From the NCBI RefSeq assembly GCF_902652985.1, contig NC_047016.1, positions 53,754,001 through 53,818,000 of the forward strand: a stretch of DNA of 64,000 nt, in the 5' to 3' direction. The first letter of the stretch is position 1. Each line of letters opens with the position of its first letter. Shown piece after piece: positions 16,691-60,349 of the stretch. This DNA comes from Pecten maximus (Eukaryota). A model generated the notes under the pieces. That model ran no database searches. It was not told the origin of the DNA and saw only the letters and a list, made by a program, of their open reading frames with translations. The translations under genes were made by a program, and so were the position numbers.

Positions 16691-17948
16691 TTATACTTCA
16701 TCAAATGTCTGTGAAAAAGCCACGCCGCCCATGACTGACGTCATCAAGAACATAATAAGAAAAAACAAACAAAACAAAGGGACGTCAAGTCTCGGCAGCA
16801 CGTCTTTAAGGCAAGCACGTGTCTCTGTTCCATTTCTGTCTTTTACCGTGAATGATTGCACACTGATATCACTCACGTTATCCGAATCTTTAATGTCAGG
16901 ACTACTGACTTTGGATTGCTTCCCTTGTTTACAGGATATAAACACTTTAGAAATACACGCCGGTACTGGCCTTGCTCCATACTCGATGTAGAGACGAACT
17001 TGTATGACTGTTACCAGGACGATGATGACACTAAACATCAGAAGTGCGAGCAGGTAGATCGTCAGGTAAGATACATCTATTGAGCTATGAGGAAGTTCGG
17101 AACTGATAATTCCCAGAAACACAGCGTACGACAGGTACACGGTCACACAGAAGGAATTCTTCTCTCCAGATGAAAGTGGAATTAAGAATACACAGACGTT
17201 TAGAAAGGCCAGGAGGATGACGGGAGAAATGATCGTCAATATAACGAATTTCGGCCGCCGCTGTAGACATAATGAATAAAATTACAAATGAATTAGATTC
17301 CAAATCAAGTTCAGCACTTTCAATCTCAGAACTCACCAATTTCCATTCGACATTTTCTTCGAAATACTTAATGTTGATTGATTCTGGTGTTGTAATAAAG
17401 GCGACTTTGGACGAAGGCTCATCCCAAATTTCGAATTCCATATGGCAGGTCTGTGTATCGAACGGGTAATACGTTATATCGACTTCACACGTCACAACGA
17501 AACTGTCGGCTGGAAACCACTCAACCTTTCCATCTGCCATGATCTCAGCTTTTGAAGCCAACTGGGAAAGCATATTTAATCTCCCAAAAGTATTGATAAG
17601 GGCAATATTCGGCTGCCAGATTGAACTCCCATCAACATACACATGCGACACATTACCAAAATCAGACCCGTTCCAGGCTAAAGACTCGTCTATCCAGCGT
17701 ATGCTAAACCATCCGGATATTACAAGTCTCTGTGCCTTTTCATCGAATTCGTTTATCGAATTCAGCAGGAACATCATGGACACAGGTATGGTGTCACTTT
17801 GGTTGATAACAGGCCGGATTCGATTGTCATAGCCATTGAAAATATGTTTGTAAACATCCTTCACATCTTGTAAAGTTGGTGACGAGATGGTGACGGTTAC
17901 CATTAATACCAGTAAGAACCAAGTCAATAGATTGTCTGTTGGTTTCAT
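16691..17948 (-). pseudogene. Intronless nAChR-like (Cys-loop pLGIC) gene A with +1 frameshift just before TM1
   Basis: Signal peptide MKPTDNLL..., GYDNRIRP, WQPNI, Cys-loop CEVDITYYPFDTQTC, M2 SGEKNSFCVTVYLSYAVFL and TM4. Span is 1258 nt (one extra base); TAAAATTAC at ~17277-17285 corresponds to TAAGCTAC in paralogue A'. Could be a sequencing error. Confidence 0.85.
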
Positions 17949-18667
17949 GTTCTTCAGTACTCTACAAACCAACACCCACAACGTCTGTGATTAATTCTGA
18001 AGCTGCTGTAGCGAATTCCCCTAGTAAAGGGATGATTATACGTGGTATTAACACGTGCATATATTTGGTTTAATACCAGAACTGTTTTAAGCCGTGATTT
18101 CGTTGAGGGGTGTGAAGTAAGAATTTAATTATATGTTGTAAATGTTTAATAGCAAAGCGTCTATTACCGGTTTAATACACGCGTATACCCCACACTAACA
18201 CGTTCGTTTTGTACATTAACAACGTCAGATCAGAGAACCGTGAGATTACTGATGTTTTATATCAATAAACACGATTGTCCTGTCATACCTGTGTGTCTCA
18301 TTAACGTTCGAACTGGTAAATTATTTGTCACCCTAGACATTAATTGTCATTCTCTCGACGCCACCACAGTCTCTATCTCGTTTCCTCGGGTCTCATGTCC
18401 ACGTCATATCTCACCTTTACACTGACACATAAATACCAAAAAAGTAAGACAAATACCTTATTAGAGATACAATACAGCTGGTTGCTAAGGAGAGTGTTAC
18501 ATCGCAAAATAACCCATCCATGACCAATGTTGGTTATTGATTAAAGGAACTAACTCAGGCTTTTAAGAATTGTAGATTTATGGATGGAGACCATGGGAAG
18601 TTTTCAGGTTGGTCGAAATCATGTTGAAATAAATATTCTATTTGATTGTGCGATGCAAGTCGAACCT

Positions 18668-18879
18668 GGTGGTCGAATGGTTAAGGTGTCCCGACACTTT
18701 ATCACTAGTCCTTTACCTCTGGGTTGCGAGTTCGAAACTTACGTGGGGCAGTTGCCAGGTACTGACCGTAGGCCGGTGGTTTTTCTCCGGGTACTCCGGC
18801 TTTCCTCCACCTCCAAAACCTGGCACGTCCTTAAATGACACTGGCTGTTAATAGGACGTTAAACAAAAACAAACAAACC
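18668..18879 (+). mobile_element. tRNA-derived V-type SINE, slightly 5'-truncated
   Basis: Same family, plus strand, with A/B boxes and an AAAC tail. Confidence 0.92.
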
Positions 18880-19733
18880 AAATCAAACCTATTATATACT
18901 TGTTCATATTCGATGTGGTTCCACTATTCTAATTATTTTACTATGATGATGCAACAGCTGGATGTAGAAGGCCTTAACTTTCATCAAGTTTTGTATAGTT
19001 AGAGACTTAGTAAGTAAATAACATCAAAAATATCAAGTTTCAATACCTTTCCGTGGAAAGTTTTACGTATATTGTTTAGATCCGGAAAATGTTGTTATTC
19101 AAATAGAATGTCGGTTTCAAAACACCTACGGATCCATTGGCATACAGAACACTTGGTTTTGCCTTTACACTTCAGTTCATGATTTTAAAAGGGATTAGCA
19201 GCTTGGGATATAAAATGATTATTTAACACGTCAGTTTTCGTTGATGATGACGGCAAATTAATTGACATGTTGAATTTTTGATTTAGTGTGGATAAGTATG
19301 TTAGCATTCAAGCATCCGATAACTTTACCCTTCTATGGAAAAGGTATTAAGTTTCCTGATTCTAAAATGAAGAAGGTTTATGATAATCCAGGTAGCTCTA
19401 CCTGCTTATTTTCCTATCTTTTGCGATGAAACAATGACCACCCAAATAAGGTGCTGGCGTGATAGATGTTATTTACCTGGATACAAACCTGCCTCGTTAA
19501 TACTGGATTTTTAACCTTAAAAGCATGATTTACTGCTGATTCACATCCTTAAGAAAAGCATACGTCGTATGGATTGTATAAATGTCACACGACATATTAA
19601 CACAATTCAATACAAACTGGAAGTTAGATACGATAGAGCCAAAATCATGAATTAAAATGCATCACAAAGCTGTTTCCTCTTTCTAGGACTTCTACGTGAT
19701 TTTAAGAACCTAAGGATTTGATTCCTAGTAGGC

Positions 19734-19968
19734 TTTTGGTTTGTTTTGGTTTGGTTTGTTTTTGTTTAACGTCTTATTAACAGCCAGGGTCATTTAAGGA
19801 CGTGCCAGGTTTTGGAGGTGGAGGAAAGCTGGAGTACCCAGAGAAAAACCATAGGCCTATGGTCAGTACCTGGCAACTGCCCCACGTAGGTTTCGAACTC
19901 GCAACCCAGAGGTGGAGGGCTAGTGATAAAGTGTCGGGACACCTTAACCACACGGCCACCGCGGCCCC
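19734..19968 (-). mobile_element. tRNA-derived V-type SINE
   Basis: Same family; TSD CCTAGTAGGC / CCTAGGAGGC. Confidence 0.92.
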
Positions 19969-20139
19969 CTAGGAGGCGACCGGAAAAAAAAACACGAAAG
20001 TGGTCAGAAGGGATGCGTATATTATGAAGCGTCAATTAAAATACGGCACAAAGAACTAAAACAGTAATGTAGCTGTTTCTTACTATGTTCCGCCCTTCTT
20101 GGATAATTCATAAATATTATGGTGGGAGGTACAATGTTG

Positions 20140-20466
20140 AAATACAGTGAAGGCAATCGAAATCTGCCAAAGATGATATGGAAATACGGAAAAGGACATT
20201 CAAATCTGACAAAAATAATGGGGAAATTTATACAGAAAAAGAAATTCAAATCTGCCACAAATACTATGGAAATACAGGAAAGAAATTCAAATTTGCCAAA
20301 AATGATGTGGAAATACAGAAAAGGAAATTGAAATCTGCCAAAGATAATATCGAAATACAGGAAAGAAATCTAAATCTGTCAAAAATGATATGGAAACCAG
20401 AAAATGATTTAAATCTGTCAAAGATAATGTAAAAATACAAGGGAAAGAAATTCAAATTTGCCAAAA
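20140..20466. repeat. Degenerate ~42-bp tandem repeat (AAATCTGCCAAAGATGATATGGAAATAC...)
   Basis: ~8 diverged units; paralogue at ~39620-39935. Confidence 0.8.
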
Positions 20467-21756
20467 TTGCTTTATTCCTCGTGTTGCATGATGAATTACA
20501 TTCACAACCATTAAAGGTTACATAAAAAATATACATCAGACATAGCATATCGACATTACAAGATCGTTCCTTAACTTGCTTTTTGTCCGAGACAAGTATG
20601 GTTTGTGTTTTCCTTTAAAATAACAAAATTAAAGGTAGGCAGTTGTTTTTATGATAACAAAAGTTTACTAAGCCTGATGAACGAGTTCTATATGACAAAA
20701 TTCAGTCTCTTGAATGTTTGAACTCTTCAATATACTATTTCATATTAAGCCAATTTTTAGATCTGAATACATGGTTTACACTTAAAATAAATCAATATAA
20801 ATATTCTTCTCTGCTGTAAATAGCTATTTTATACTCCAGTGAAGTACACTTGTTATTGTAAAATACGATCAAATCTAATCTTATTATTCTTAAGTTCCAC
20901 TTTCCTCTGCTCTACTGTTCAACATCTTAAAATAATTCGAAAATGATTGAAAGAGATTTTATCACAATTCTACAAGGTTCATTCTCAAGTGTAAGTCCCT
21001 CATCACAAACACAATACCCAAAGGGACATTTCACTAATGCATTGTTCAAACACATACTATGCAATGTCATAGAAACATCTACCACGGCGTCCATAATGTC
21101 ATTGATTCACACAAACGAAGAATAGTCCGGAATAACCCGAAGTCTAAATCTTTTTGTAACGGCCATAACTCAGTACACAGAAACACCCCATGTTTTCCTT
21201 TATCGGGTCTCTACCAGATGTAAATGTACTATTTTCGTTAACTTAGGCAAGAAATCTTAACAGCGATAAAATTGTATGGATTCTATATGTTAATGTATGA
21301 CTACAATACTCCTGCATTGATTTCACATCCATTTAGATGTAAAACAAACAGACAAATGATCGTTTTTTTATATTTGAGAGACGGCCGCCATTTTGGAAAC
21401 TTACTTTAAATTCAACTGCGTTCCATTATAGAGTACCGTACATTTTAGATACAACTGGTACGATCCTGATCAAGGAATATTAAGATAATAGGTCACATGA
21501 ACCATACATAAAACAATACAAATTCCGAAAATCGGATTTTGCCACAACGTCCATAACCGTCATCATAAATGTGAATATACCATAAAGTCAATAGTTATCG
21601 ACGTAATGCATTGCAACATGGAAAGGTCATAATACTCGTAGCTATCGTTGCCCTCGCAATACTTTACAAAGAACGAGAATTGACCACAACGCTAAACTTG
21701 GTCATCACAACACCTCACAAAGAAAGGTATAAATATAGGCTGATATGAAATCCACT

Positions 21757-23007
21757 TCATATGGAATGTGAGTAGGATATGGCGCCGATAGTCGACGTCA
21801 TAACGCACAAAATGACCAGGAACAAAAAGAACAAAGGAATGTCAAATTTCGGCAGGATGTCCTTTAAGCAAGTTATCGTCTCTTTTTCGTTTTGATTGTT
21901 AAATTCAAACGGTTCCACAACGTTTTCCGTCGTGACGTCCAAATCATTATTGTCCTGGGGAGTTACTTGAGATCGAGTTCCATTTGTGCAGAAGCCACAT
22001 ACTTTTAAAATTGATGCCGGAACTGGTGTTTCTCCATACTCGATAAAGAGACGAACCTGTATGACTGTTATCAGGACGATGATGACACTGAAAACCAACA
22101 GTGCGAGCAGATATATGGCCAGATAGGACACGTTTTTGGAGTTGGGTGGGAGCTCTGAGCTGATTATTCCTAGAAACACAGCGTATGACAGGTACACGGT
22201 TACACAGAACGCATTCTTCTCTCCTGAAGATAAGGGAATTAGGAATACACAGATATTGAGAAACGCCAACAGGATAACGGGAGCGATCAGTGTCAGGATA
22301 ACGAATTTAGGTCTCCGCTGTAGGAGCAAGAAATATTGTACAGATGAAATCGGTACTCCGTACTCCATTTCCAAGTTTTTTACAACAGAACTCGTCAGTC
22401 TCCATTCCACATTTTTCTCGAAATAACTCGTATCAATTGATTTTGATGTTGCCATGAGCACCACTTCGGAGGTAGGAGCGTCCCACATTTCGAATTTCAA
22501 AGAGCAGCGTTGTGTATCAAAAGGGTAATACGTAATATCGACTTCACACTTCACAACGAAACTGTCAGATGGGAACCATTCGACTTCCCCATTGACGTTG
22601 ATCACAGCCCTTGTCGCAAACTGGGAAAGCATGTTCATTCTACCAAAGGAATTCAAAAGGACAATATTCGGCTGCCAGATTGATTTCCCATCAACATATA
22701 CATGCGACACGTTACCAAAATCAGACTTGTTCCAGGTTAAAGATTCGTCTACCCACCGTATGATAAACCAACCTGCGATTACAAGTTTCTGTGACTTTTC
22801 ATTGAATTCGTTTATCGAACTCAGCAGAAAGGTCATAGACACAGATAAGGCCTCACTTTGGTTGATTAAAGGCCGGATTCGATTGTCATAACCATTGAAA
22901 ATGTGTGTGTAGATATCCCTCACATCTTGTAACGTTGGTGACGAGATGCTGACATTTGTCATCAATGCCAGCAATAACCAGGTAAATAGGATGTCCGCTG
23001 ATGTCAT
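21757..23007 (-). CDS. Intronless nAChR-like pLGIC subunit B (416 aa, non-alpha, intact)
   Basis: Signal peptide from MTSADILF, Cys-loop CEVDITYYPFDTQRC, four TMs, M2 GEKNAFCVTVYLSYAVFL; no vicinal CC in loop C. Confidence 0.93.
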   Translation of the reverse strand: MTSADILFTWLLLALMTNVSISSPTLQDVRDIYTHIFNGYDNRIRPLINQSEALSVSMTFLLSSINEFNEKSQKLVIAGWFIIRWVDESLTWNKSDFGNVSHVYVDGKSIWQPNIVLLNSFGRMNMLSQFATRAVINVNGEVEWFPSDSFVVKCEVDITYYPFDTQRCSLKFEMWDAPTSEVVLMATSKSIDTSYFEKNVEWRLTSSVVKNLEMEYGVPISSVQYFLLLQRRPKFVILTLIAPVILLAFLNICVFLIPLSSGEKNAFCVTVYLSYAVFLGIISSELPPNSKNVSYLAIYLLALLVFSVIIVLITVIQVRLFIEYGETPVPASILKVCGFCTNGTRSQVTPQDNNDLDVTTENVVEPFEFNNQNEKETITCLKDILPKFDIPLFFLFLVILCVMTSTIGAISYSHSI

Positions 23008-23559
23008 ACTCAGTACAACTCTACACATCAGGTATCTGTCAGGAATTTGTAAATCTGATGAAGAGATAAAACTGACTTTACTTATGTACAATGTGTTACT
23101 GAGAAAGAAAGTCACCCATAGGTTGTACCTATTCATTTATAATCAATAACACAACTGTCTGAAGTTCTATCTCACGGTCTTACAACGTAACAGAGCGTAT
23201 AATGTACTAATATACTCATAGCTAAAAGTCCAAGTACCTAATTAAAGATGAAACAAAGCTTTTAATTGATAAATCAATACTGTTTACGAAGATATAGTCG
23301 TGTTCATCATACACGTGGATACCTCAAACGCTAAGCGCGTTACGTTGGAGGTAGGCGTTAAAGACCACGATGGAAATGAGATTAAGGAGAGTTTGAAATA
23401 CTATCTGCGTGAATACAGCAAAAAGATCATTACAACGTGTCTATGGGGCTTGTTACACGTGAGATGATAAAGACATGGGATTCTCCCTCGCATGATTGAT
23501 GCTTGTTTTGTCCCATTTTATCAAACTCACAGCATGAATAGACACTCAAATCTAATAAC

Positions 23560-23900
23560 TGTATCATCATATCTCTCAAGCTTGTTATGTATTCTCATAT
23601 CTCTAAAGCTTGCTATATATCCTTATATCTCTATAGCTAGCTTGCTTTGTATCCTCATATTGATATCGCTAAAGCTTGCTATGTATCCTCTTGTATCTAT
23701 AGCTTGCTATGTATTCCCATATCTCTAAAGCTTGCTATGTATCAGCATGCATCTAAAAAAATGCTATGTATTACAATATCTCTATTGCTTGCTATGTTTT
23801 ATTATCTCTCTATTGCTTGCTATGTACCATCATGCCTCTAAAGCTTCGCTATGTATTATAATATCGCTAAAGCTTGTATCTCTATTGCTTGCTATGAGAC
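23560..23900. repeat. Short, degenerate 28-bp minisatellite
   Basis: ~12 diverged AAAGCTTGCTATGTA... units; paralogue of 43766-48200. Confidence 0.85.
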
Positions 23901-25463
23901 CTTGTATCTCCTTATATCTTATATCATATTGACTCTGGCTGTTAAAAAGGACGTTTAACAAAAATAAACCAAATCTATTCTCATATATCTAATACTGGGA
24001 AGCTGCAATGTATCCTTATATCTCTAAATCCAATTTGAAGTTCGCGAATTTAAATCATATACTCCAGAACATTAACACTGAAGCCTATGGGAAAACTATT
24101 GGTTGTTTGGTTCCGACTATGGTGATCATTTACCCAAGGGGCATATATACATGTAGTCAGTAGGACACCGTCCCGCGATACTTTAATGTATTAGAAATCG
24201 TCCGTTATTATGATGTCCTGATCAACTTAAAATAGTGCCAGCCATCATGAACATATGATGATATGGATACTTATAAAATTCAATGTTAACATGCTTTAAC
24301 TGTAATGCTTCATTGTAATGAAATTGAATTGAGATGTAAACATCAGAAAATAATAATATCAAAAAGATAGTCGCGTTTGTAAGTTTACCAGTTCTGAGCT
24401 TACCTTTTCTAAGTGAAACTTGGCATGACTTGACACTCGGTGAATTTTTAAACAACGTGTATACCATGGCGTCTAAGTTGGAAACAAGAGACGAGGCGGT
24501 GTATACTCCGTATCGACCAACGGAATATTATATGTAATAACTTGTATAAATCAGTCAGTTTCGATACCGTTTAATTGATTGTGAAGTCACAGATTATAAT
24601 TGTCTTTTTTTTTTTTGTAATCGATTCAGGAATATCTCCTTTCCCTTCATGCGTCACTCGATATATCACCTGATTACAACGTAAACAACTTGTCTCTTGG
24701 TTTATATTGGTCCAATCACAGGCGATCGATTTAAAGGAAATGATTTGCTGTAACAGCGATACACATTGACAAGGTATGCCATCAGATAGGTGCCAACCTT
24801 TTTAATGAAGTTTGTTTTTACTGAAACGACGCGCGCTCTGCGTAAAGTACGACAAATTGATGTAGAATGACGTCATGATATGGGAAATAACATTTGTATA
24901 CGATACCCCCAATAAGTTATTAAAAGAGGTAAACATATACACCTTATTAGCACTGTACGTTCTGTAATTATAAAACGTGTTTCTCGTTTTATATGCATAA
25001 CACACATCGCTAATTAGAAATGGACAAAAGAAATTTTTAAATTAATTAGTCTGTTTGAGTCATCTCTGAAATAGATTAAAAACGATCAACACTAACATCG
25101 AATGTACATTCAGAATGAATGAGAAACGAAAACGATTTTTAATTCAAATTCTGTTCAAGCTTGACTTAGAAAAGACTAAATGTTGAAAAGAATACTGCTC
25201 CTTTTTGGCGCATGAATCTGTGCTTTATTTCATAGCATCTTACAATTACTGGTTGAATTTCTTTGGAGTATTTTTCTGAAAATAAAAGATAAAAATAGAA
25301 GAAAAATTAAATTTAAAAAAATCAGTAATTCGCTAATTCATTCTGTGTTTAAATTTCATAACAGGATATTTTTCGTAATGGTCTTTGTAAATATCAATTC
25401 AATGACAAGCTATATCTTTAATTATGGTCTATGCGAAAATTCAGTGAGTAACTTAAGTAAGGT

Positions 25464-41188: not shown

Positions 41189-42439
41189 TCATATGGAATG
41201 TGAGTAGGATATGGCGCCGATAGTCGACGTCATAACGCACAAAATGACCAGGAACAAAAAGAACAAAGGAATGTCAAATTTCGGCAGGATGTCCTTTAAG
41301 CAAGTTATCGTCTCTTTTCCGTTTTGATTGTTTAATTCAAACGGTTCCACAACGTTTTCTGTCGTGACGTCCAAATCATTATTGTCCTGAGGAGTTACTT
41401 GAGATCGAGTTCCATTTGTGCAGAAGCAACACACTTTCAAAATTGATGCCGGAACTGGTGTTTCTCCATACTCGATATAAAGACGAACCTGTATGACTGT
41501 TATCAGGACGATGATGACACTGAAAACCAACAGTGCGAGCAGATATATGGCCAGATAGGACACGTTTTTGGAGTTGGGTGGGAGCTCTGAGCTGATTATT
41601 CCTAGAAACACAGCGTATGACAGGTACACGGTTACACAGAACGTATTCTTCTCTTCTGACGATAAGGGAATTAGGAATACACAGATATTGAGAAACGCCA
41701 ACAGGATAATGGGAGCGATAAGTGTCAGGATAACGAATTGAGGTCTCCGCTGTAGGAGCAATAAATATTGTACAGATGAAATCGGTTCTCCGTACTCCAT
41801 TTCCAATTTTTTTACAACAGAACTCGTCAGTCTCCATTCCACATTTTCCTCGAAATAACTCGTATCAATTGATTTTGATGTTGGCATGAGCACCACTTCG
41901 GAGGTGGGAGCTTCCCACATTTCGAATTCCAAAGAGCATTGTTGTGTATCAAAAGGGTAATACGTAATATCGACTTCACACTTCACAACGAAACTGTCAG
42001 ATGGGAACCATTCAACTTCCCCGTTCGCGTGGATCCCAGCCCTTGTCTCTAACTGGGAAAGCATGTTCATTCTACCAAAGGAATTCAAAAGGACAATATT
42101 CGGCTGCCAGATTGATTTCCCATCAACATATACATGCGACACGTTACCAAAATCAGACTTATTCCAGGTTAAAGATTCGTCCACCCACTGTATGTTAAAC
42201 CAACCCGCGATTACAAGTTTCTGTGACTTTTCATTGAATTCGTTTATCGAACTCAATAGAAAGGTCATGGACACAGATAAGGCCTCACTTTGGTTGATGA
42301 GAGGCCGGATTCGATTGTCATAACCTTTAAAAATGTGTGTGTAGATATCCTTCACATCTTGTAACGTTGGTGACGAGATGGTGACATTTGTCATCAATGC
42401 CAGTAGGAACCAGGTAAATAGGATGTCCGCTGATGTCAT
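41189..42439 (-). CDS. Intronless nAChR-like pLGIC subunit B' (416 aa, non-alpha, intact)
   Basis: Paralogue of B with 27 aa differences by manual alignment; Cys-loop CEVDITYYPFDTQQC; M2 SEEKNTFCVTVYLSYAVFL. Confidence 0.93.
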   Translation of the reverse strand: MTSADILFTWFLLALMTNVTISSPTLQDVKDIYTHIFKGYDNRIRPLINQSEALSVSMTFLLSSINEFNEKSQKLVIAGWFNIQWVDESLTWNKSDFGNVSHVYVDGKSIWQPNIVLLNSFGRMNMLSQLETRAGIHANGEVEWFPSDSFVVKCEVDITYYPFDTQQCSLEFEMWEAPTSEVVLMPTSKSIDTSYFEENVEWRLTSSVVKKLEMEYGEPISSVQYLLLLQRRPQFVILTLIAPIILLAFLNICVFLIPLSSEEKNTFCVTVYLSYAVFLGIISSELPPNSKNVSYLAIYLLALLVFSVIIVLITVIQVRLYIEYGETPVPASILKVCCFCTNGTRSQVTPQDNNDLDVTTENVVEPFELNNQNGKETITCLKDILPKFDIPLFFLFLVILCVMTSTIGAISYSHSI

Positions 42440-43117
42440 ACTCAGTTCAACTCTACACATCAGAAATCTGTCAGGAATTTGTAAATCTGATGAAGAGATA
42501 AAACTGACTTTACTTATGTACAATGTGTTACAGAGAAAGAAAGTCACCCATATATTAAACCTGTTCATTTATAACCAATAACACAACTGTCTGAAGTTCT
42601 ATCTCATGGTCTGACAACGTAACAGAGCGCAAAATGTATTAATACACTAATAGCTAAAAGTTCAAGTACCTAATTAAAGATGAAACAAAGCTTTTAATTA
42701 ATAAATCAATACTGTTTACGAAGATATAGCCGTGTTCATCATACACGTGGATACCTCAAACGCTAAGCGCGTTACATTGGAGGTAGGCGTAAAAGACCAC
42801 GATGGAAATGAGATTAAGGAGAGTTTGAAATACTATCTGCGTGAATACAGCAAGAAGATCTCTACAACGTGTCTATGGGGCTTGTGACACGTGAGATGAT
42901 AAAGACATGGGATTCTCCCTCGCATGATTGAAGCTTGTTTTGTCCCATTTTACCAAACTTACAGCATGAATAGACACTCAAATCTAATAACTGTATCATC
43001 ATATCTCTCAAGCTTGTTATGTATTCTCATATCTCTAAAGCTTGCTATATATCCTTATATTTCTATATATTGCAGCTTGCGTTTTATCCTCACATTGATA
43101 TCTTTAAAGCTTGCTAT

Positions 43118-43765
43118 GGTAGCACACCACAGTAAGACAGCCTGGCCATGGGCAATTTTTTTGTTAAGCAAATAACTCCTGTATTATGATATGTATAAAA
43201 AATGAAAAAATAAATGTACACTATAATTGGTATATCCAGTATGAAGTAGTACATACAGGCTTCACATTTATTAAAACAAAAATCAATAAATTGGTTCCGG
43301 ATTTTAAATATCCGGATTTTCCGAACGTGTGTTTACACAGGAAATTTAGTTTTGCCTACAGCGCAAAATGGAAGCCCACAGAAAAGGTAAGATAGCGGAA
43401 AAACTTAATTTACAACATATGTCCAAACAAGATTAATTCTGTCTTTGGGATAGAGATATTTAATTTTAAATAGGTTTCAGAAAAAAAATTGTGTAGAGAA
43501 TTGTGCCATTTTGGGTCAAATATCATAATATTTTGCAATTTTTGAGAATTTTTTAAGCTGTTACCATGGTATTCACAGCTTTAAAATCACAGAAAATATC
43601 AGTTTACTTATCCTTCAGAGCTCTATTAAAATTGCAAATGTTGTACAGATTTCAAATATATATACTTTATTAGAGGTTATATGTAAGGTTAACTGGCAAT
43701 GTTTACATATCTAAAGCATGTGCCATATTTTTCAGAATTTGGCATTTTTACTGTACACTGCTACC
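43118..43765. mobile_element. Non-autonomous DNA transposon (MITE), copy 2 only
   Basis: Imperfect TIRs GGTAGCAcaccACAGTAA / TTACTGTacacTGCTACC and a 3-bp TAT duplication inside a minisatellite unit. GG..CC ends with a 3-bp TSD fit PIF/Harbinger or Zator; not resolved. Confidence 0.75.
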
Positions 43766-46700
43766 TATGTACTCCCATATCTCTTAAGCTTGCTATGTAT
43801 TCCCATATCTCTAAAGCCTGCTATGTATTCTCATACCTCTAAAGCTTGCTATGTACTCCCTTACCTCTAAAGCTTGCTATGAACTCCCATGTCTATAAAG
43901 CTTGCTATGTACTCCAATGTATATAAAGCTTACTATGTACTTCCATATCTCTAAAGCTTGCTATGTATTCTCATACCTCTAAAGCTTGCTATGTATTCCC
44001 ATATCTCTAAAGCTTGCTATGTACTCCCATATCTATAAAGCTTGCTATGTATTCTCATACCTCTAAAGCTTGCTATATACTCCCATATCTCTAAAGCTTG
44101 CTATGTACTCCCATATCTCTAAAGCTTGCTATGTATTACAATATTTCTATTGCTTGCTATGTACTCCCATATCTCTAAATCTTGCTATGTACTCCCATAT
44201 CTCTAAAGCTTGCTATGTATTCCCATATCTCTAAATCTTGCTATGTACTCCCATATCTCTAAATCTTGCTATGTATTCTCATACATACAAAGCTTGCTAT
44301 GTACTCCCATATCTCTAAATCTTGCTATGTACTCCCATATCTCTAAAGCTTGCTATGTACTCCCATATCTCTAAAGCTTGCTATGTATTCTCATACATCT
44401 AAAGCCTGCTATGTATTCCCATATCTCTAAAGCTTGCTATGTATTCTCATGCCTCTAAAGCTTGCTATGTACTCCCATATCTCTAAAGCTTGCTATGTAC
44501 TCTCATATCTCTAAAGCTTGCTATGTATTACAATATCTCTATTGCTTGCTATGTACTCCCATATCTCTGAAGCTTGCTATGTACTCCCATATCTCTAAAG
44601 CTTGCTATGTATTCTCATACCTCTAAAGCTTGCTATGTATTCCCATATCTCTAAAGCTTGCTATGTACTCCCATATCTATAAAGCCTGCTATGTATTCCC
44701 ATATCTCTAAAGCTTGCTATGTATTCTCATGCCTCTAAAGCTTGCTATGTACTCCCATATCTCTAAAGCTTGCTATGTACTCCCATATCTCTAAAGCTTG
44801 CTATGTATTACAATATCTCTATTGCTTGCTATGTACTCCCATATCTCTGAAGCTTGCTATGTACTCCCATATCTCTAAAGCTTGCTATGTATTCTCATAC
44901 CTCTAAAGCTTGCTATGTATTCCCATATCTCTAAAGCTTGCTATGTACTCCCATATCTATAAAGCCTGCTATGTATTCTCATACCTCTAAAGCTTGCTAT
45001 ATACTCCCATATCTCTAAAGCTTGCTATGTACTCCCATATCTCTAAAGCTTGCTATGTATTACAATATTTCTATTGCTTGCTATGTACTCCCATATCTCT
45101 GAAGCTTGCTATGTACTCCCATATCTCGCAAGCTTGCTATGTACTCCCATATCTCTAAAGCTTGCTATGTACTCCCATATCTCTAAATCTTGCTATGTAC
45201 TCCCATATCTCTAAAGCTTGCTATGTATTCCCATATCTCTAAAGCTTGCTATGTAGTCCCATATCTCTTAAACTTGCTATGTACTCCCATACCTCTAAAG
45301 CTTGCTATGTACTCCCATATCTCTAAAGCTTGCTATGTACTCCCATATCTCTAAAGCTTGCTATGTACTCCCATACCTCTAAAGCTTGCTATGTATTACA
45401 ATATCTCTATTGCTTGCTATGTACTCCCATATCTCTAAAGCTTGCTATGTACTCCCATATCTCTAAAGCTTGCTATGTACTCCCATATCTCGAAAGCTTG
45501 CTATGTACTCCCATACCTCTAAAGCTTGCTATGTATTCCCATATCTCTAAAGCTTGCTATGTACTCCCATATCTCTAAAGCTTGCTATGTATTCCCATAT
45601 CTCTAAAGCTTGCTATGTACTCCCATACCTCTAAAGCTTGCTATGTATTACAATATCTCTATTGCTTGCTATGTACTCCCATATCTCTAAAGCTTGCTAT
45701 GTACTCCCATACCTCTAAAGCTTGCTATGTATTCCCATATCTCTAAAGCTTGCTATGTACTCCCATATCTCTAAAGCTTGCTATGTACTCCCATATCTCT
45801 AAAGCTTGCTATGTACTCCCATATCTCTAAAGCTTGCTATGTATTCCCATATCTCTAAAGCTTGCTATGTACTCCCATACCTCTAAAGCTTGCTATGTAT
45901 TACAATATCTCTATTGCTTGCTATGTACTCCCATATCTCTAAAGCTTGCTATGTACTCCCATATCTCTAAAGCTTGCTATGTACTCCATATCTATAAAGC
46001 TTGCTACGTACTCCCATATCTCTAAAGCTTGCTATGTATTACAATATCTCTATTGCTTGCTATGTACTCCCATATCTCTAAAGCTTGCTATGTACTCCCA
46101 TATCTCTAAAGCTTGCTATGTACTCCCATATCTCTAAAGCTTGCTATGTATTCCCATATCTCTAAAGCTTGCTATGTACTCCATATCTATAAAGCTTGCT
46201 ATGTACTCCCATATCTCTAAAGCTTGCTATGTATTACAATATCTCTATTGCTTGCTATGTACTCCCATATCTCTAAATCTTGCTATGTACTCCCATACCT
46301 CTAAAGCTTGCTATGTATTCCCATATCTCTAAAGCTTGCTATGTACTCCTATATCTCTAAAGCTTGCTATGTATTCCCATATCTCTACAGCTTGCTATGT
46401 ACTCCCATACCTCTAAAGCTTGCTATGTATTACAATATCTCTATTGCTTGCTATGTACTCCCATATCTCTAAAGCTTGCTATGTACTCCCATATCTCTAA
46501 AGCTTGCTATGTATTCCCATATCTCTAAAGCTTGCTATGTACTCCATATCTATAAAGCTTGCTATGTACTCCCATATCTCTAAAGCTTGCTATGTATTAC
46601 AATATCTCTATTGCTTGCTATGTACTCCCATATCTCTAAAGCTTGCTATGTATTCCCATATCTCTAAAGCTTGCTATGTACCATCAAGCCTCTAAAGCTT

Positions 46701-48200
46701 GCTATGTACTCCCATATCTCTAAAGCCTGCTATGTATTCTCATACCTCTAAAGCTTGCTATTTACTCCCATATCTCTAAAGCTTGCTATGTATTCCCATA
46801 TCTCTACAGCTTGCTATGTACTCCCATGCCTCTAAAGCTTGCTATGTATTACAATATCTCTATTGCTTGCTATGTACTCCCATATCTCTAAATCTTGCTA
46901 TGTACTCCAATACCTCTAAAGCTTGCTATGTATTCCCATATCTCTAAAGCTTGCTATGTACTCCTATATCTCTAAAGCTTGCTATGTATTCCCATATCTC
47001 TACAGCTTGCTATGTACTCCCATACCTCTAAAGCTTGCTATGTATTACAATATCTCTATTGCTTGCTATGTACTCCCATATCTCTAAAGCTTGCTATGTA
47101 CTCCCATATCTCTAAAGCTTGCTATGTATTCCCATATCTCTAAAGCTTGCTATGTACTCCATATCTATAAAGCTTGCTATGTACTCCCATATCTCTAAAG
47201 CTTGCTATGTATTACAATATCTCTATTGCTTGCTATGTACTCCCATATCTCTAAAGCTTGCTATGTATTCCCATATCTCTAAAGCTTGCTATGTACCATC
47301 AAGCCTCTAAAGCTTGCTATGTACTCCCATATCTCTAAAGCCTGCTATGTATTCTCATACCTCTAAAGCTTGCTATTTACTCCCATATCTCTAAAGCTTG
47401 CTATGTATTCCCATATCTCTACAGCTTGCTATGTACTCCCATGCCTCTAAAGCTTGCTATGTATTACAATATCTCTATTGCTTGCTATGTACTCCCATAT
47501 CTCTAAAGCTTGCTATGTACTCCCATATCTCTAAAGCTTGCTATGTACTCCCATATCTCTAAAGCTTGCTATGTATTACAATATCTCTACAGCTTGCTAT
47601 GTACTCCCATACCTCTAAAGCTTGCTATGTATTCCCATATCTCTAAAGCTTGCTATGTATTCCCATATCTCTAAAGCTTGCTATGTACTCCCATATCTCT
47701 AAAGCTTGCTATGTACTCCCATATCTCTAAAGCTTGCTATGTATTCCCATATCTCTAAAGCTTGCTATGTACTCCCATACCTCTAAAGCTTGCTATGTAT
47801 TACAATATCTCTATTGCTTGCTATGTACTCCCATATCTCTATTGCTTGCTATGTACTCCCATATCTCTAAATCTTGCTATGTACTCCCATATCTCTAAAT
47901 CTTGCTATGTATTCTCATACCTCTAAAGCTTGCTATGTACTCCCATACCTCTTAAGCTTGTTATGTATTACAATATCTCTATTGCTTGCTATGTACTCCC
48001 ATATCTCTAAATCTTGCTATGTACTCCCATATCTCTAAAGCTTGCTATGTACTCCCATATCTCTAAAGCTTGCTATGTACTCCCATACCTCTAAAGCTTG
48101 CTATGTACTCCCATATCTCTAAATCTTGCTATGTACCATCAAGCCTCTAAAGCTTGCTATGTACCATCATGCCTTTAAAGCTTCGCTATGTATTATAATA
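43766..48200. repeat. 28-bp minisatellite (AAAGCTTGCTATGTACTCCCATATCTCT), ~155-160 units
   Basis: Homogeneous array with a periodically recurring variant unit (TATTACAATATCTCTATTG). Confidence 0.97.
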
Positions 48201-49456
48201 TCTCTATTGCTTGCTATGAGACCTTGTATCTCCTTATATCTTATATCATATTGACTCTGGCTGTTAAAAAGCATGTTTTACAAAAATAAACCAAATCTAT
48301 TCTCATATATCTAATACTGGGAAGCTGCAATGTATCCTCATATCTCTAAATGTAAATTTGAATTTACATATAATATTAACACTGAAGCCTATGTGAAAAC
48401 TGTTGGTTGTTTGGTTCCGACTATGGTGATCATTTACCCAAGGTGGATATATAGTCGGTAGGACACAATCCCGCGATACTTTAATGTATTAGAAATCGTC
48501 CATTATTATGATGTCCTGATCATGTTTAAATAACGTTAGCCACCATGTGCATATGACAATATGGATACTTGAAACCATGTTTATAACGCTATAATGGTAA
48601 CATGATTAACTGTAATGTTTCATTGTAATGAAATTGAATTAAGACGTTAACATCAGAATATAATAATATCAAAAAGATAGTCGCGTTTGTAAGTTTACCA
48701 GTTCTGAGCTTACCTTTTCTAAGTGAAACTTGGCATGACTTGACACTCGATGAATTTTAAAACAACATGTATACCATGGCGTCTAAGTTGGAAACAAGAG
48801 ACGAGGCGGTGTATACTCCGTATCGACCAACGGAATATTATATGTAATAACTTGTATAAACCAGTCAGTTTCGACACCGTTTAATTGATTGTGAAGTCAC
48901 AGATTATAATTGTCTTTTTTTTTTAAAGCGATTCAGGAATATCTCCTTTACCTTCATGTGTCACTCGATATATCACCTGATTACAACGTAAACAACGTGT
49001 CTTTTGGTTTGTATTGGTGCAATCACATGCGATTGATTTACAGGAAATGATTTGCTGTAACAGCGAGATAGGTGCCAACCTTTTTAATGAAGTTTGTTTT
49101 TACTGAAACGACGCGCGCTCTGCGGAAAGTACGACAAATTGATGTGGAATGACGTCATGATATGGGAAATAACATTTGTATACGATACCGCCAATAAGTT
49201 ATTAAAAGAGGTATAGCACTGTACGTTCTGTAATTATAAAACGTGTTTCTCGTTTTATATGCATAACACACATCGCTAATTAGAAATATTTACATTTCCA
49301 CTGTGTGTTCTCTATATGAAGGTACTAACAAAATAAGTGTTCATTCCTAGGTGAACAATTAACCTGCCGCGTATGAATACATAAAGTACATTGTTGACAA
49401 GTGTGACTATAAACTCGCGTTTGATTACACATGAAATAATGTTTTATCAACATTAA

Positions 49457-52136: not shown

Positions 52137-52765
52137 CAACATTAAAACTTGTTAATAATTGTAAAATTGAAGACAACATTTCAATATTTTTCTTTTATGA
52201 TGATTAAAATAATGAATTTGTATGGAACTATATTTTGTGTACTTGTGAACTTGATTACCTTTCCCGCCAAATTGGAACTATCTGTTATGCGGTTACATCG
52301 ATCAATCAGCTGTTTCGTCACTACGTATAACGAACGTAGAATACTGTTTCTTATGACGTTGAAAAGTAGTTTTGAAATGTAAACATATGAAATAATTGTT
52401 ATTTTTTGTTGTTCACTGGTGTAGGAACAGCATTTTTTGACAGATATTATAACATGACGCGCTAACTAATTTATTCTGTGTTTAAATTTCATGACAGGAT
52501 ATTTTTCATAATGGTCTATGTAAATATTATGGTCTAGGGTAAGGTAAATGACCATCAAGTGACGAACTATGTTTTTAATTATGGTGTATGTAAATGAACA
52601 TCAAGTGACGAACTATATTTTAATTACGGTGTATGTAAATGAACATCTAGCGACGAACTACATTTTTAATTATGGTGTATGTAAATGGCCATCAGGTGAC
52701 GAACTATATTTTTAATTACGGTGTATGTAAATGACCATCCAGTGACGAACTCTATACAGGTTATA

Positions 52766-58133: not shown

Positions 58134-58209
58134 CTTACCGATCGTCCCTCATCTGGTATCTATCGCGCCTTATCTAAAACACTTACCTGACAGAGAGGTC
58201 CGACTTATA

Positions 58210-59058
58210 GGTAGCGCACCACTAAATACAAACCCTACATACATACATTGTACCACATAAAAACACCACACAATACTTACCATATTTACCCATCGAGTTA
58301 TGCGAGCGTGACACAGTTAATGTTGGTGTATCTCAGTATAATTATAAATAGATTACAGAACTTTATTAGACATTTTCCCCAATTCACTTTGTCCGTGGTC
58401 TACGATAGCGCCTTCTTTACCTTAACCAAGGCCCATGTTCATTTCAGTGTATTGTAGTAAGTACACATAGAAAATTTGAAAAGCCCTGACAATTGTTTGG
58501 AAAACTCACCATTCCCGACACCATCTGTAGTCATTTCTTCTCACACTCTACGGTAACAGTATATATAATTGCTCAATTCTGAAAGAATATGCTATTTTCA
58601 TACAGGTTTGGATAAGTATACTTATTTTTCTATGTTTTTCGGACCTATAAATACGATGGTAACCACTTTCCAAAACATTAAATAGCATAATATTATGATA
58701 TTGACCCAAAATGACACAATTCTCTACACAATTTGTTTTCTGAAACGTATTTGAAATTAGATATCTCTATCCAAATGACAGAATTAATATCGTTTTGGCA
58801 TATATTCATGATCAAGTTTATTCTTACCTTATTTGTAACCTACCGTTTTCCTCTGTAGTCAAAACTAAATTTCCGGTGTACCTGGAAATTTAAAATTTGG
58901 GAAAAATATATTTATTTATTCTTTAACAAATGTGAAGCCTGTACATGCTGCTTGATAATGGATATGCCAATTATAATAAACATTTCATTTTTCATTGTAT
59001 GCATATTATATAGGAGGTTTTTGCTTAACAAAAAAATCACCCATGGCCAGACTGTTTA
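58210..59058. mobile_element. Diverged relative of the 43118-43765 MITE in inverted orientation
   Basis: Begins GGTAGCGCACCAC; ~58660-59056 is a diverged reverse complement of ~43135-43560. Confidence 0.65.
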
Positions 59059-59172
59059 TATGCGATAAATATGAAATACTAACAAGAAGGGGGGAAATCA
59101 CCTATTACGGATATGTAATATGTAACGTTTTACAGCAATCTTTTCAACTCTTTACAAGGGGACGTACATACA

Positions 59173-60349
59173 TCACGGTCTCATTGCTGACGCCATGACA
59201 CACAAGACAACTAGGAATATACAAAACAGCGTGACGTCAAGGATTCGTAACATGGCCTTCATATAAACACATGGCCTCCTTCTCCTCCAATGTTTCCACG
59301 TCATCATCTTTAACGCAATATGGATCAGTAATGGTAGCTTGAGATCGGGTTCCACGTGTGCAGAAGCCACACACTTTCAAAATGGATACCGGGACTGGTG
59401 TTTCTCCATACTCGAAATAAAGCCGAACTTGTATGACTGTTACCGGAACGATAATGACACTGAAAACCGTAAGTGTGAGTAGATACATGGCCAGGAAGGA
59501 AACGTTTGGGGAGTTGTGAGGAAGTTCGGAGCTGATTATTCCTAGAAACACAGCGTATGACAGGTACACCGTCACACAAAATGAATTCTTCTCTCCTGAA
59601 GACGCCGGTATGAGAAACACGCAGACATTTAGAAACCCCAGTAGGATTACGGGGGCGGAGATAGTCGAGATAATGAACTTTGGCCTCCGCTACAAATGAA
59701 AAAATCAAAATCGTCCGCAATTTATTTTGAAATCCAAAACATAGAACATCTTACCATATTACCTGCCATTCGACCATACGAGTTTCATATTATTTTTTCA
59801 CTATATGATGTGGTTTCACCATTATAATAAATCGATGTTATATGATGAAAAAACACCATTATGACAACACTTCGCCATTATATGACAGCATTTCACCATT
59901 ATATGACAACACTTCACAATTATATGACAGAGCTTCATCATTATATAACAGCACTCCGCCATTATATGACAACACTTCGCCATGATACGATTTCACCATT
60001 ATATAATAGGAAGATATGCTAAGGAGGAAGCGCTCACATCATATAATGACAATATCGCATCATATAGTAGCAAAGTGATATCATATAATGACAATATCGC
60101 ATCATGTAATGGTGATATGATATCATATAATAGTAAAATCAAATCATATAATCAACATTTATCAAATAAGGCATCTTAGGCGTTCCATATTCCTATTGCT
60201 TTGATTTAAAAAGGAACGATTCGTTTGTCGTAACCATTGAAAATATGTGTGCAGACATATTTCACATTTTGTAGTGTATGTGACGAGATGGTGATAATCA
60301 TTATTAATGCCAGTAAGAAGCTGTGTAACAGGGTGTCCTCTGATGCTAT
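59173..60349 (-). pseudogene. nAChR-like gene C, decayed, most of the extracellular domain deleted
   Basis: 60349-60213 encodes IASEDTLL...HIFNGYDKRIVP (ATA in place of ATG). 59690-59173 encodes RRPKFII...SGEKNSFCVTVYLSYAVFL...TM3, with TM4 in another frame. The ECD is replaced by ~520 bp of unrelated DNA. Confidence 0.85.
59790..60189. mobile_element. IS3EU-like MITE remnant with inward-facing ~21-bp subrepeats
   Basis: CATTATATGACAACACTTCGC units followed by inverted CATCATATAATG units; ends GGCGTTCCATA, the exact reverse complement of the start of the 57087 element. Left end not defined. Confidence 0.55.

What the first reader, a model, noticed from the sequence alone, without database searches (positions are those of the whole stretch)
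16691..60349. Tandem array of five intronless, ACh-site-deficient Cys-loop channel genes: candidate bivalve chemoreceptor system
Seen in sequence: five co-oriented loci with uninterrupted coding regions (A 16691-17948, B 21757-23007, A' 36172-37427, B' 41189-42439, C 59173-60349) in different states of birth and death. The four with an ECD keep the Cys-loop and the loop B and D tryptophans. They lack the loop C vicinal cysteines and the loop A tyrosine (WQPNIALIN / WQPNIVLLN versus canonical WxPDxxLYN). M2 is cation-type ([G/E]EK, 9'L, 13'V) and the M3-M4 loop is short. Established: intronless nAChR-like genes are expanded in bivalves, and cephalopod chemotactile receptors are tandem, intronless, nAChR-derived channels that lost acetylcholine gating. 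Inference: this cluster may encode sensory channels for non-ACh environmental ligands.
Basis: partly seen in the sequence, partly recalled or inferred. Interest (0 to 1): 0.78.

Follow-up and report, generated by a model that had tools for sequence, protein, structure and literature searches.

The report
Scallop orphan nicotinic-like channel gene array
This is a tandem cluster of intron-free, nicotinic-receptor-like ion-channel genes in a scallop, one more example of a gene expansion already described in bivalves, and nothing yet shows that these channels are chemoreceptors.

Summary
On the minus strand lie five Cys-loop receptor loci at the stated coordinates (Pfam PF02931+PF02932). They lack the loop C Cys-Cys and the loop A Tyr. 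They keep the Cys-loop, the loop B and D Trp and a cation-type M2.

Corrections:
- A/B and A'/B' are two copies of a ~20 kb, 95-96% identical tandem segmental duplication.
- Only C is clearly dead: ATG lost, 556 nt of the extracellular domain replaced, frameshift before M4.
- A and A' each carry one homopolymer 1-bp indel. A's is absent from an independent short-read contig, and without it A reads 418 aa open.
- dN/dS is 0.25-0.37.
- A sixth, intact member (D) lies 1.7 kb beyond the window.

The window matches the Pecten maximus chromosome record. The genes form a scallop-specific clade (100/100) with arrays in three other scallop genera. The genome holds at least 94 further open single-frame relatives. 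None of the 23 sampled has the loop C Cys-Cys or loop A Tyr, so "ACh-site-deficient" is generic here.

B is 24-27% identical to α7, β2, Alpo4 and cephalopod CRT1/CRB1 alike. Tissue expression could not be tested. The chemoreceptor idea is open but unsupported. The scan noted two similar arrays in this genome before.

The parts
16691..17948 (-). Gene A: non-alpha nAChR-like subunit. The assembly shows a +1 frameshift at 17278. The gene is probably intact in the animal.
   Evidence: It appears as two ORFs, 17085-17981 and 16691-17239, carrying PF02931 and PF02932. The extra base lies in an A4 run. Run X1's contig over 17050-17861 leaves one base out at 17278. Without that base the frame is open for 418 aa.
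21757..23007 (-). Gene B: intact, 416 aa, single exon, non-alpha nAChR-like cation-channel subunit.
   Evidence: ORF. Pfam E = 2.7e-47 and 8.2e-12. Best solved relatives are human alpha3, Torpedo gamma, beta2 and alpha7, with E from 3e-45 to about 1e-42. AlphaFold2 model pLDDT 83.3. Structure match to beta2 Z 31.0 and alpha7 Z 30.8.
36172..37427 (-). Gene A': copy of A. The assembly shows a -1 frameshift at 36286-36287 just before M4. M4 is still readable, without stops, in the shifted frame.
   Evidence: Pfam. A-A' dN/dS is 0.25. The indel could not be checked against reads.
41189..42439 (-). Gene B': intact copy of B, 416 aa. It differs from B by 27 amino acids, including G262E at M2 -2'.
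   Evidence: B-B' dN/dS is 0.37.
59173..60352 (-). Locus C: pseudogene remnant. It has ATA instead of ATG. It keeps a signal peptide and the first ~44 codons (60218-60352). Most of the extracellular domain is replaced by about 526 nt with 21-bp repeats. M1-M3 lie at 59338-59691, and M4 is in another frame.
   Evidence: (79% identity over residues 226-353, 1 TAG).
7303..25021 (.). Copy 1 of the tandem segmental duplication. It carries A and B.
   Evidence: Self-BLAST:
- 14244-21712 matches 33713-41182 at 96.3%.
- 21750-23683 matches 41182-43118 at 95.3%.
- 7572-9093 matches 29715-31222 at 94.9%.
- 23560-25021 matches 47908-49287 at 85.4%.
29015..49287 (.). Copy 2 of the tandem segmental duplication. 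It carries A' and B', and also a 28-bp satellite at 43765-48218.
20455..21756 (-). Possible 3' untranslated region of B (inference). AATAAA lies on the minus strand at 20476-20471.
   Evidence: Contigs of runs X6 (20473-21040, depth 56) and X10 (20706-21355) lie here. DNA runs show ordinary depth over the same stretch. Sequence. The kind of run (RNA) is only the tool's guess, and the strand is unknown.

Best explanation
The window carries most of a six-locus, co-oriented tandem array (A, B, A', B', C in the window; D 1.7 kb beyond it). The genes are single-exon and encode non-alpha, nicotinic-receptor-like subunits of cation-selective pentameric ligand-gated channels. They belong to a subfamily restricted, as far as sampled, to scallops.

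How the array grew (inference from the tree): by DNA-level tandem duplication in the scallop lineage. The latest step is a ~20 kb segmental duplication that made A'/B' from A/B. The same satellite families (35 bp, 21 bp, 33 bp) recur around and inside both copies. This suggests unequal recombination but does not prove it.

State of the genes:
- B, B' and D are intact.
- A is very probably intact, because its frameshift is missing from short-read contigs.
- A' is uncertain.
- C is dead.

How the proteins work (inference from family knowledge): the pore and the gating interface are conserved. The principal face lacks the loop A Tyr and the loop C Cys-Cys and second Tyr, so a homomer could not form a canonical ACh site.

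What they most likely are: orphan subunits. I see two options.
- About 45%: they form channels, among themselves or with other orphans, gated by something other than ACh. An external chemosensory version accounts for about 12 of those 45 points.
- About 35%: they serve as complementary or structural non-alpha partners of alpha-type subunits. This would fit the retained loop D Trp.

The confidence given below is for the identity and the evolutionary account, not for a ligand.
For: Family:
- Pfam PF02931+PF02932.
- Best solved relatives are nAChR subunits, E from 3e-45 to about 1e-42.
- Model pLDDT 83.3, with Z 31.0 to beta2 and Z 30.8 to alpha7.

Scallop-specific clade:
- Of the 16 hits in the word search, 11 are named scallop proteins at 54-68% identity, 10 full-length and one 239-aa fragment. 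They sit on one contig per species: 4 Mizuhopecten, 4 Ylistrum, 2 Argopecten and 1 Pecten maximus.
- The next hit drops to 42%.
- The clade has 100/100 support. D pairs with an Argopecten protein at 100/99.

Genome context:
- 100 scored matches of 280 candidates, and 94 of the 100 have no stop inside.
- Outside this array the best is 37% identical.
- No further copies of A' exist anywhere in the assembly.

Duplication.

Selection:
- dN/dS is 0.25 (A-A'), 0.37 (B-B') and 0.28-0.31 for older pairs.
- Regional identity among 14 subfamily proteins: Cys-loop 0.91, M2 0.91, M1 0.84, M3 0.85, against loop C 0.29, loop F 0.41 and loop E 0.45.

A's frameshift: absent from run X1's contig, and the frame is then open for 418 aa.

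Site residues.

The phenomenon is in print: Jiao et al. 2019, PMC6896357.
Against: - No proof of transcription. No listed holder is on record as RNA. The two runs laid as 'RNA?' are guesses. One of them also has low-depth contigs on intergenic DNA.
- The cluster of the self-match to B holds one member on one contig. So no near-identical protein from any transcript assembly is in that collection.
- A and A' are frameshifted in the assembly as it stands.
- The two 96%-identical copies could in principle be an assembly artefact (two haplotypes laid in tandem). I had no control stretch for depth, so I could not exclude this. Against it: another individual's contigs differ from copy 1 by only about 1.2% (13 of 1063), well below the 4% between the copies.
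- B and B' differ by 5 amino acids within residues 130-138 (loop E). The scan gives P = 0.017 for a 9-codon window but 0.06 and 0.15 for 12 and 15 codons. This hints at divergence of the binding face rather than plain conservation.
Confidence: 0.8

Rival explanations
1. The subfamily forms peripheral chemosensory channels, in mantle edge, tentacles, gill or larvae, gated by environmental non-ACh ligands. This would be a bivalve parallel to the cephalopod chemotactile receptors.
For: - The array shares single-exon, tandem, nAChR-derived genes and loss of alpha-type ACh residues with the receptors described in review PMC11526382 (passages).
- The binding loops are the most variable parts, while the pore and Cys-loop are conserved.
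- Five B/B' replacements cluster in loop E.
- Preprint PMC13174522 (passages and section 3.4.4 read) reports a 'CR-like' clade that includes bivalves. It raises an ionotropic chemosensory role for divergent molluscan nAChR clades.
Against: - The shared features do not discriminate. All 23 of 23 other paralogues sampled lack the loop C Cys-Cys and the loop A Tyr. At least 94 open single-frame relatives exist in the genome.
- B is 24% identical to CRB1 and 26% to CRT1, against 27% to alpha7 and 27% to Alpo4.
- No chemotactile-receptor chain is among the best 60 of 109 sequence matches in the solved-structure search.
- dN/dS in the extracellular domain (0.22-0.38) does not stand apart from the rest of the protein (0.21-0.36), with no sign of positive selection at gene level.
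- Loops C and F are the variable ones in this superfamily generally (recalled).
- There are no tissue data.
Confidence: 0.12
2. The proteins are ordinary non-alpha (complementary or structural) subunits. They co-assemble with alpha-type subunits into ACh-gated heteromers, as vertebrate beta, gamma, delta and epsilon subunits do.
For: - The complementary-face loop D Trp is kept in 11 of 14 subfamily proteins. The loop B Trp is kept in 14 of 14.
- The principal-face loop A Tyr and loop C Cys-Cys are lost. This is the pattern of non-alpha subunits (family knowledge, recalled).
- NCBI's automatic names for the relatives are 'beta-3-like' and 'non-alpha-2-like'.
- Purifying selection is seen.
Against: - The other complementary-face loops are poorly conserved: loop E 0.45 and loop F 0.41.
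- D, P0008 and P0009 have lost the loop D Trp.
- It is hard to see a need for over a hundred accessory subunits per bivalve genome; in C. gigas 33 of 132 nAChR genes are alpha-type (Jiao et al. 2019).
- No partner has been identified.
Confidence: 0.35
3. The array is mostly evolutionary debris: recently duplicated, weakly or not expressed copies on their way to loss. Under this reading the frameshifts in A and A' are real.
For: - C is clearly dead.
- A and A' are frameshifted in the assembly.
- B-B' coding identity (96.0%) is no higher than the flanking non-coding identity (95.3-96.3%).
- Jiao et al. 2019 report more intron-poor than intron-rich nAChR genes with no or low expression.
Against: - dN/dS is 0.25-0.37 for the young pairs.
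- A's indel is absent from short-read contigs.
- After A's and A' 's single indels there are no further stops.
- Orthologous lineages are kept across four scallop genera.
- M1-M3 and the Cys-loop are 84-91% identical across the subfamily.
Confidence: 0.1

Closest known systems
Intronless, tandemly arrayed nAChR gene expansion of bivalves (Jiao et al. 2019, BMC Genomics, PMC6896357)
   Same: The genes have single-exon coding regions and sit in co-oriented tandem arrays. Duplication is lineage-specific, the binding residues diverge, and some copies have decayed. A scallop (M. yessoensis, 138 genes) is in that paper's census.
   Different: That paper does not treat Pecten maximus or single out this subfamily.
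Vertebrate non-alpha nAChR subunits (beta2, beta4, gamma, delta, epsilon)
   Same: The fold and cation-type M2 match. There is no loop C Cys-Cys. The loop D and loop B Trp are kept. Beta2 is the best structural match at Z 31.0, with 24% identity.
   Different: The scallop genes are intronless. They have a short M3-M4 loop of about 63 residues. Loop A has lost both the Tyr and the Asp of the WxPD motif in 14 of 14 subfamily members. Partners are unknown.
Cephalopod chemotactile receptors (octopus CRT1, squid CRB1)
   Same: They are nAChR-derived, intronless, cation-channel genes that have lost ACh-type residues (review PMC11526382, passages). The fold match is Z 24.0 for CRB1 and Z 23.3 for CRT1.
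   Different: Identity is only 24-26%, no higher than to alpha7, so no specific kinship is shown. No sensory expression or ligand is known here. No tree with receptor sequences could be built here.
Alpo4, orphan nAChR-like receptor of the annelid Alvinella pompejana (eLife 2023, PMC10338036)
   Same: It is a lophotrochozoan nAChR-like subunit without the loop C Cys-Cys, and its ligand is still unknown after screening (passages). Z 25.5, 27% identity.
   Different: It comes from a different phylum and clade. The paper describes Alpo4 as keeping the key aromatic residues.

Membership tests
Cys-loop (pentameric ligand-gated) cation channel, nAChR-like | Ligand-binding domain plus four-helix transmembrane domain | tested here: met
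   PF02931 and PF02932 are above cut-off in B, B' and A'. The model has a beta-sandwich plus helices 233-256, 263-285, 295-324 and 381-415. Z is 31.0 to beta2 and 30.8 to alpha7.
Cys-loop (pentameric ligand-gated) cation channel, nAChR-like | Cys-x13-Cys loop with the FPFD-type core | tested here: met
   CEVDITYYPFDTQxC is present in A, A', B, B' and D. Identity across the 14 subfamily proteins is 0.91.
Cys-loop (pentameric ligand-gated) cation channel, nAChR-like | Cation-type M2 (Glu at -1', no Pro-Ala-Arg) | tested here: met
   SSGEKN, or SSEEKN in B', followed by ...YLSYAVFL. That this motif implies cation selectivity is recalled.
Alpha-type (ACh-binding principal face) nAChR subunit | Vicinal Cys-Cys at the tip of loop C | tested here: not met
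   0 of 14 subfamily proteins, and 0 of 39 aligned rows, have Cys-Cys there.
Alpha-type (ACh-binding principal face) nAChR subunit | Aromatic box: loop A Tyr, loop B Trp, two loop C Tyr, loop D Trp | tested here: not met
   - Loop A Tyr: 0 of 14.
- Loop B Trp: 14 of 14.
- Loop D Trp: 11 of 14.
- First loop C Tyr: present in B and B' but not in A, A' or D.
- Second loop C Tyr: falls in a 3-residue gap against alpha3.
Sources.
Bivalve intronless tandem nAChR expansion (Jiao et al. 2019) | Single-exon coding region | tested here: met
   The frame is open from the signal peptide through M4 in B, B' and D.
Bivalve intronless tandem nAChR expansion (Jiao et al. 2019) | Tandem, co-oriented arrays from lineage-specific duplication | tested here: met
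   Six loci lie on one strand within about 50 kb. The scallop-only clade has 100/100 support.
Cephalopod chemotactile receptors | Membership of the receptor clade | tested here: inconclusive
   No receptor sequences could be obtained for a tree. Structure-based identity is 24% (CRB1) and 26% (CRT1), against 27% for alpha7. No such chain is in the 60 rows shown of 109 matches.
Cephalopod chemotactile receptors | Expression in a peripheral sensory epithelium | not testable with these tools
   Runs and samples are coded. No listed holder is on record as RNA.
Cephalopod chemotactile receptors | Gated by poorly soluble environmental ligands, not by ACh | not testable with these tools
   This needs electrophysiology.

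The most novel reading that the evidence does not exclude
Scallops evolved, independently of cephalopods, their own family of nAChR-derived environmental sensors. In this reading the scallop-only subfamily (A, B, D lineages, kept in four genera) forms channels whose conserved pore is driven by fast-diverging binding loops. One example is the five replacements in loop E between the young copies B and B'. The channels would be tuned to waterborne or contact cues such as predator or algal compounds.
Probability: 0.12. Interest if true: 0.7.

Novelty: new member of a known kind. Interest (0 to 1): 0.3.

Why it matters
If these channels proved to be gated by environmental ligands, bivalves would offer a second, independent case of neurotransmitter receptors turned into chemoreceptors. 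That would help explain why bivalve genomes hold 99-217 nAChR-like genes (Jiao et al. 2019).

As it stands, the array is one ordinary example of that known expansion. Its practical value is as a compact, well-defined candidate set for deorphanisation: B, B', D and probably A. It also warns that single-base frameshifts in this assembly can be artefacts.

Tried and rejected
Phylogeny against the cephalopod chemotactile receptors:
- It was not possible, because no tool gave me their sequences.
- The primary papers were not held: van Giesen 2020 (PMC7605239), Allard 2023 (PMC10228259) and the Current Biology primer (PMC11055638).
- I used structure-based identities instead.

dN/dS with orthologues and synteny in other scallops:
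- Only paralogues within this genome were used. Synteny rests on the shared contig lengths.

Expression:
- The single run search found no holder on record as RNA.
- The single read-laying run gave contigs only, with guessed library kinds and coded samples. It yields a hint of a transcribed stretch downstream of B and four small contigs on B's extracellular domain, but no tissue.

Other steps:
- Foldseek against the PDB listed only nAChR chains in the rows shown and did not help with the chemotactile receptors.
- The literature search for scallop tentacle or mantle nAChR expression listed nothing relevant among 15 of 30 papers.
- I did not use the protein atlas, because the family is known.

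Rejected reading: that A is a pseudogene.

Considered: that the duplication is a haplotype artefact. It is not excluded but is disfavoured.

Supplements were closed and I did not ask for them. Jiao et al.'s Table S1 (per-gene expression, including M. yessoensis) and the MolluscaGenes supplementary clade lists could bear on expression and on 'CR-like' membership.

Full report
**What is there.**
- B (21757-23007) and B' (41189-42439) are uninterrupted 416-codon genes, running from a signal peptide through M4.
- A (16691-17948) is split into two open frames.
- A' (36172-37427) loses its frame just before M4.
- C (59173-60352) is a remnant.

Pfam finds the neurotransmitter-gated channel ligand-binding domain (PF02931) and transmembrane region (PF02932) in B (E = 2.7e-47 and 8.2e-12), B' and A'. 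It finds one domain in each piece of A and PF02932 in C's 59237-59620 piece.

The best solved relatives of B by sequence are human alpha3 (3e-45), Torpedo gamma, beta2, alpha6 and alpha7, followed by 5-HT3A. An AlphaFold2 model of B (mean pLDDT 83.3) matches beta2 (Z 31.0), alpha7 (Z 30.8) and muscle subunits best.

The alignment to alpha3 and my alignments confirm them:
- the Cys-loop CEVDITYYPFDTQxC;
- the loop B Trp (FExW) and loop D Trp (GWF);
- loop A WQPNIALIN / WQPNIVLLN, without the Tyr and without the Asp of the WxPD motif;
- no Cys-Cys in loop C, which is three residues shorter than in alpha3;
- M2 SS[G/E]EKN..., with Leu at 9' and Val at 13' by my count;
- an M3-M4 loop of about 63 residues.

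One nuance: B and B' keep a Tyr at the first loop C position, while A, A' and D do not. So the 'ACh-site deficiency' is that of a non-alpha subunit. The principal face is degraded and the complementary-face Trp is kept.

**Birth and death, re-examined.**
- A's lesion is one extra base in an A4 run at 17278. A' 's lesion is one missing base in a T run at 36286-36287.
- I laid Logan contigs of four runs on 17050-23007 at 98% likeness. The DNA run X1 has an 886-nt contig over 17050-17861, with one other difference, that leaves out exactly one base at 17278.
- That contig is too close to A to come from A', which differs by about 4%.
- With that base left out, A is open for 418 codons.
- All four runs also insert an A behind 20798. 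So small indel differences between this assembly and reads occur here.
- After A' 's shift, M4 reads on without stops in the new frame. I could not test A' against reads.
- C is truly dead. It has ATA for ATG. B's CDS nt 133-688 are absent, and about 526 nt with 21-bp repeats stand in their place. There is also a frameshift before M4, and a TAG was seen.

**Duplication.** Self-comparison shows one tandem segmental duplication:

| Copy 1 | Copy 2 | Identity |
|---|---|---|
| 14244-21712 | 33713-41182 | 96.3% |
| 21750-23683 | 41182-43118 | 95.3% |
| 7572-9093 | 29715-31222 | 94.9% |
| 23560-25021 | 47908-49287 | 85.4% |

So A/B and A'/B' are the two copies of a block of about 20 kb. A and B themselves are older paralogues, about 79% identical at nucleotide level.

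The same satellites recur in or beside both copies:
- 35 bp at 6672-7290 and 25862-28796;
- 21 bp at 10096-12487 and 31657-32499;
- 33 bp at 14250-14756 and 33588-34240.

Unequal recombination between repeats is a plausible origin (inference).

A haplotype artefact is not excluded. However, contigs of another individual (X4) differ from copy 1 by about 1.2% (13 of 1063), against 4% between the copies.

**Selection (NG86 dN/dS).**

| Pair | dN/dS | dS |
|---|---|---|
| A-A' | 0.25 | 0.096 |
| B-B' | 0.37 | 0.080 |
| Older pairs (A-B, A-D, B-D and their copies) | 0.28-0.31 | - |

- The extracellular and transmembrane halves give similar values.
- B and B' differ at 50 of 1251 nt, in 27 replacement and 19 silent codons.
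- Five replacements fall in residues 130-138 (loop E). The scan gives P = 0.017 for 9-codon windows but 0.06 and 0.15 for 12 and 15 codons. This is suggestive only.
- Across 14 subfamily proteins:

| Region | Mean pairwise identity |
|---|---|
| Cys-loop | 0.91 |
| M2 | 0.91 |
| M3 | 0.85 |
| M1 | 0.84 |
| Loop A | 0.73 |
| Loop D | 0.59 |
| Loop B | 0.58 |
| Loop E | 0.45 |
| Loop F | 0.41 |
| Loop C | 0.29 |

**Where it belongs.**
- The word search (16 hits among 8000 scored candidates) returned the window's own products. It also returned a Pecten maximus protein on a contig of 55,138,983 bases, the same length as the contig of the self-match. So the window is from that species' chromosome record.
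- Scallop relatives of 54-68% identity sit together on one contig per species: 4 Mizuhopecten yessoensis (one a 239-aa fragment), 4 Ylistrum balloti and 2 Argopecten irradians. NCBI names them 'beta-3-like' or 'non-alpha-2-like'.
- The next hits drop to 42%, 32% and 28%.
- In the window's own genome the window is C2:53754001-53818000.
- A sixth member, D, lies at C2:53819662-53820906 on the same strand. It is intact, 416 aa and 62% identical to B, and has lost the loop D Trp.
- Outside the array the best relative is 37% identical.
- A DNA search with A' found only the array's own loci.
- A maximum-likelihood tree of 39 proteins gives the scallop clade 100/100. It pairs D with an Argopecten protein (100/99), and pairs A with A' and B with B' (100/100 each).
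- So the array predates the split of these genera and kept duplicating.

**How special are the features?**
- One search scored 100 of 280 candidates. 94 of the 100 have no stop inside the match, and most lie in open frames above 400 aa.
- Many are in arrays of their own, for example C10 29.12-29.19 Mb, C19 8.32-8.38 Mb and C17 17.99-18.02 Mb.
- Of the 23 paralogues I aligned (L007-L030 without L015), 0 have the loop C Cys-Cys, 0 have the loop A Tyr, 19 keep the loop B Trp and 2 keep the loop D Trp. All have GEK or GER in M2.
- These 23 were picked as the best matches to B. They are therefore biased toward B-like, intronless genes.
- Even so, the traits that prompted the chemoreceptor idea describe the whole intronless expansion in this genome, not this array in particular.

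**Literature.**
- Jiao et al. 2019 (PMC6896357; abstract and parts 1-2 of 3 of Results read) describe 99-217 nAChR genes in five bivalves, including a scallop. The genes are mostly intronless and tandem. In C. gigas 33 of 132 genes are alpha-type, and only 13 of those 33 keep complete binding sites. Expression is diverse, with gill highest, and more intron-poor genes are silent.
- A review (PMC11526382, passages) states that chemotactile receptors derive from nAChRs, are intronless and respond to hydrophobic molecules instead of ACh.
- A 2026 preprint (PMC13174522, passages and section 3.4.4) places a mostly cephalopod CR clade and a broader 'CR-like' clade, which includes bivalves, within molluscan nAChRs. 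It already raises a chemosensory role for divergent clades.
- The Alpo4 paper (PMC10338036, passages) shows a lophotrochozoan orphan without the Cys-Cys tip that is still without a ligand.
- The jingle-shell tentacle paper (PMC11682238, passages) says chemotactile receptors are known only from cephalopods.

**Relation to the chemotactile receptors.** Structure-based identities of B:

| Solved chain | Identity to B |
|---|---|
| alpha7 | 27% (31% over the extracellular domain alone) |
| Alpo4 | 27% |
| muscle epsilon | 26% |
| octopus CRT1 | 26% |
| 5-HT3A | 25% |
| beta2 | 24% |
| squid CRB1 | 24% |

B is therefore equidistant from all of them, and no specific kinship with the chemotactile receptors is shown. 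A proper tree could not be built.

**Expression.**
- No listed holder of the stretch is on record as RNA.
- Two runs that the tool guesses to be RNA were laid.
- X6 has a 569-nt contig at depth 56 on 20473-21040 and four contigs of depth 4-17 on B's extracellular domain (22422-22881). It also has 151-nt and 272-nt contigs at depth 2-3 on A and on intergenic DNA.
- X10 has a 651-nt contig on 20706-21355 and otherwise only high-copy repeats.
- DNA depth there is ordinary.
- On the minus strand AATAAA lies at 20476-20471, where X6's depth stops. This fits a ~1.3 kb 3' untranslated region of B, but strand, library kind and tissue are unknown.
- The cluster of the self-match to B has one member on one contig. 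So no near-identical transcript-derived protein is in that collection.

**Verdict.**
- The identity is secure: a scallop-specific, purifying-selected array of orphan non-alpha nAChR-like cation-channel subunits, grown by tandem and segmental duplication.
- The array is a member of a published expansion.
- The chemoreceptor reading remains a hypothesis without discriminating evidence.
- This scan has already noted two similar arrays elsewhere in this genome. One of them was followed up, with the same conclusion.

Noticed in passing
beyond the window: G000:C2:53819662-53820906 (-), locus L004:1498-2745: A sixth, intact member of the array (D, 416 aa, 62% identical to B) lies 1.7 kb past the window's end. 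It has Met instead of the loop D Trp and pairs with an Argopecten protein in the tree.
   Followed up: yes
window 17278 and 20798: Short-read contigs disagree with the assembly by single bases. One A is left out at 17278 (run X1), and an A is put in behind 20798 (all four runs). Single-base frameshifts in this assembly should not be read as pseudogenisation without read support.
   Followed up: partly
window 1235-1463, 7706-7933, 18668-18889, 19738-19968, 29830-30055, 38145-38366, 39226-39449: An interspersed repeat of about 220 bp, 90-93% alike between copies. Summed contig depth over it is in the hundred-thousands in every run laid. Two inverted copies flank 1 kb between A and B, and likewise between A' and B'.
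   Followed up: no
window 43765-48218: A 4.4 kb satellite of 28-bp units (159 copies) with strong GC skew (-0.43). It is present only in the second copy of the duplication, just upstream of B'.
   Followed up: no
window 49797-52179 (-): Two open frames of 485 and 241 aa. The first has a reverse-transcriptase domain (PF00078, E = 1e-19). This is a retroelement inserted between B' and C.
   Followed up: partly
window 8262-8960 (+): A 232-aa open frame with no Pfam match, inside the duplicated block 7572-9093. No frame of 150 aa or more is listed in the second copy (29715-31222).
   Followed up: partly
window 20455-21756 (-): Contigs of two runs guessed to be RNA pile up downstream of B's stop. 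They end at a minus-strand AATAAA (20476-20471). This may be B's 3' untranslated region.
   Followed up: partly
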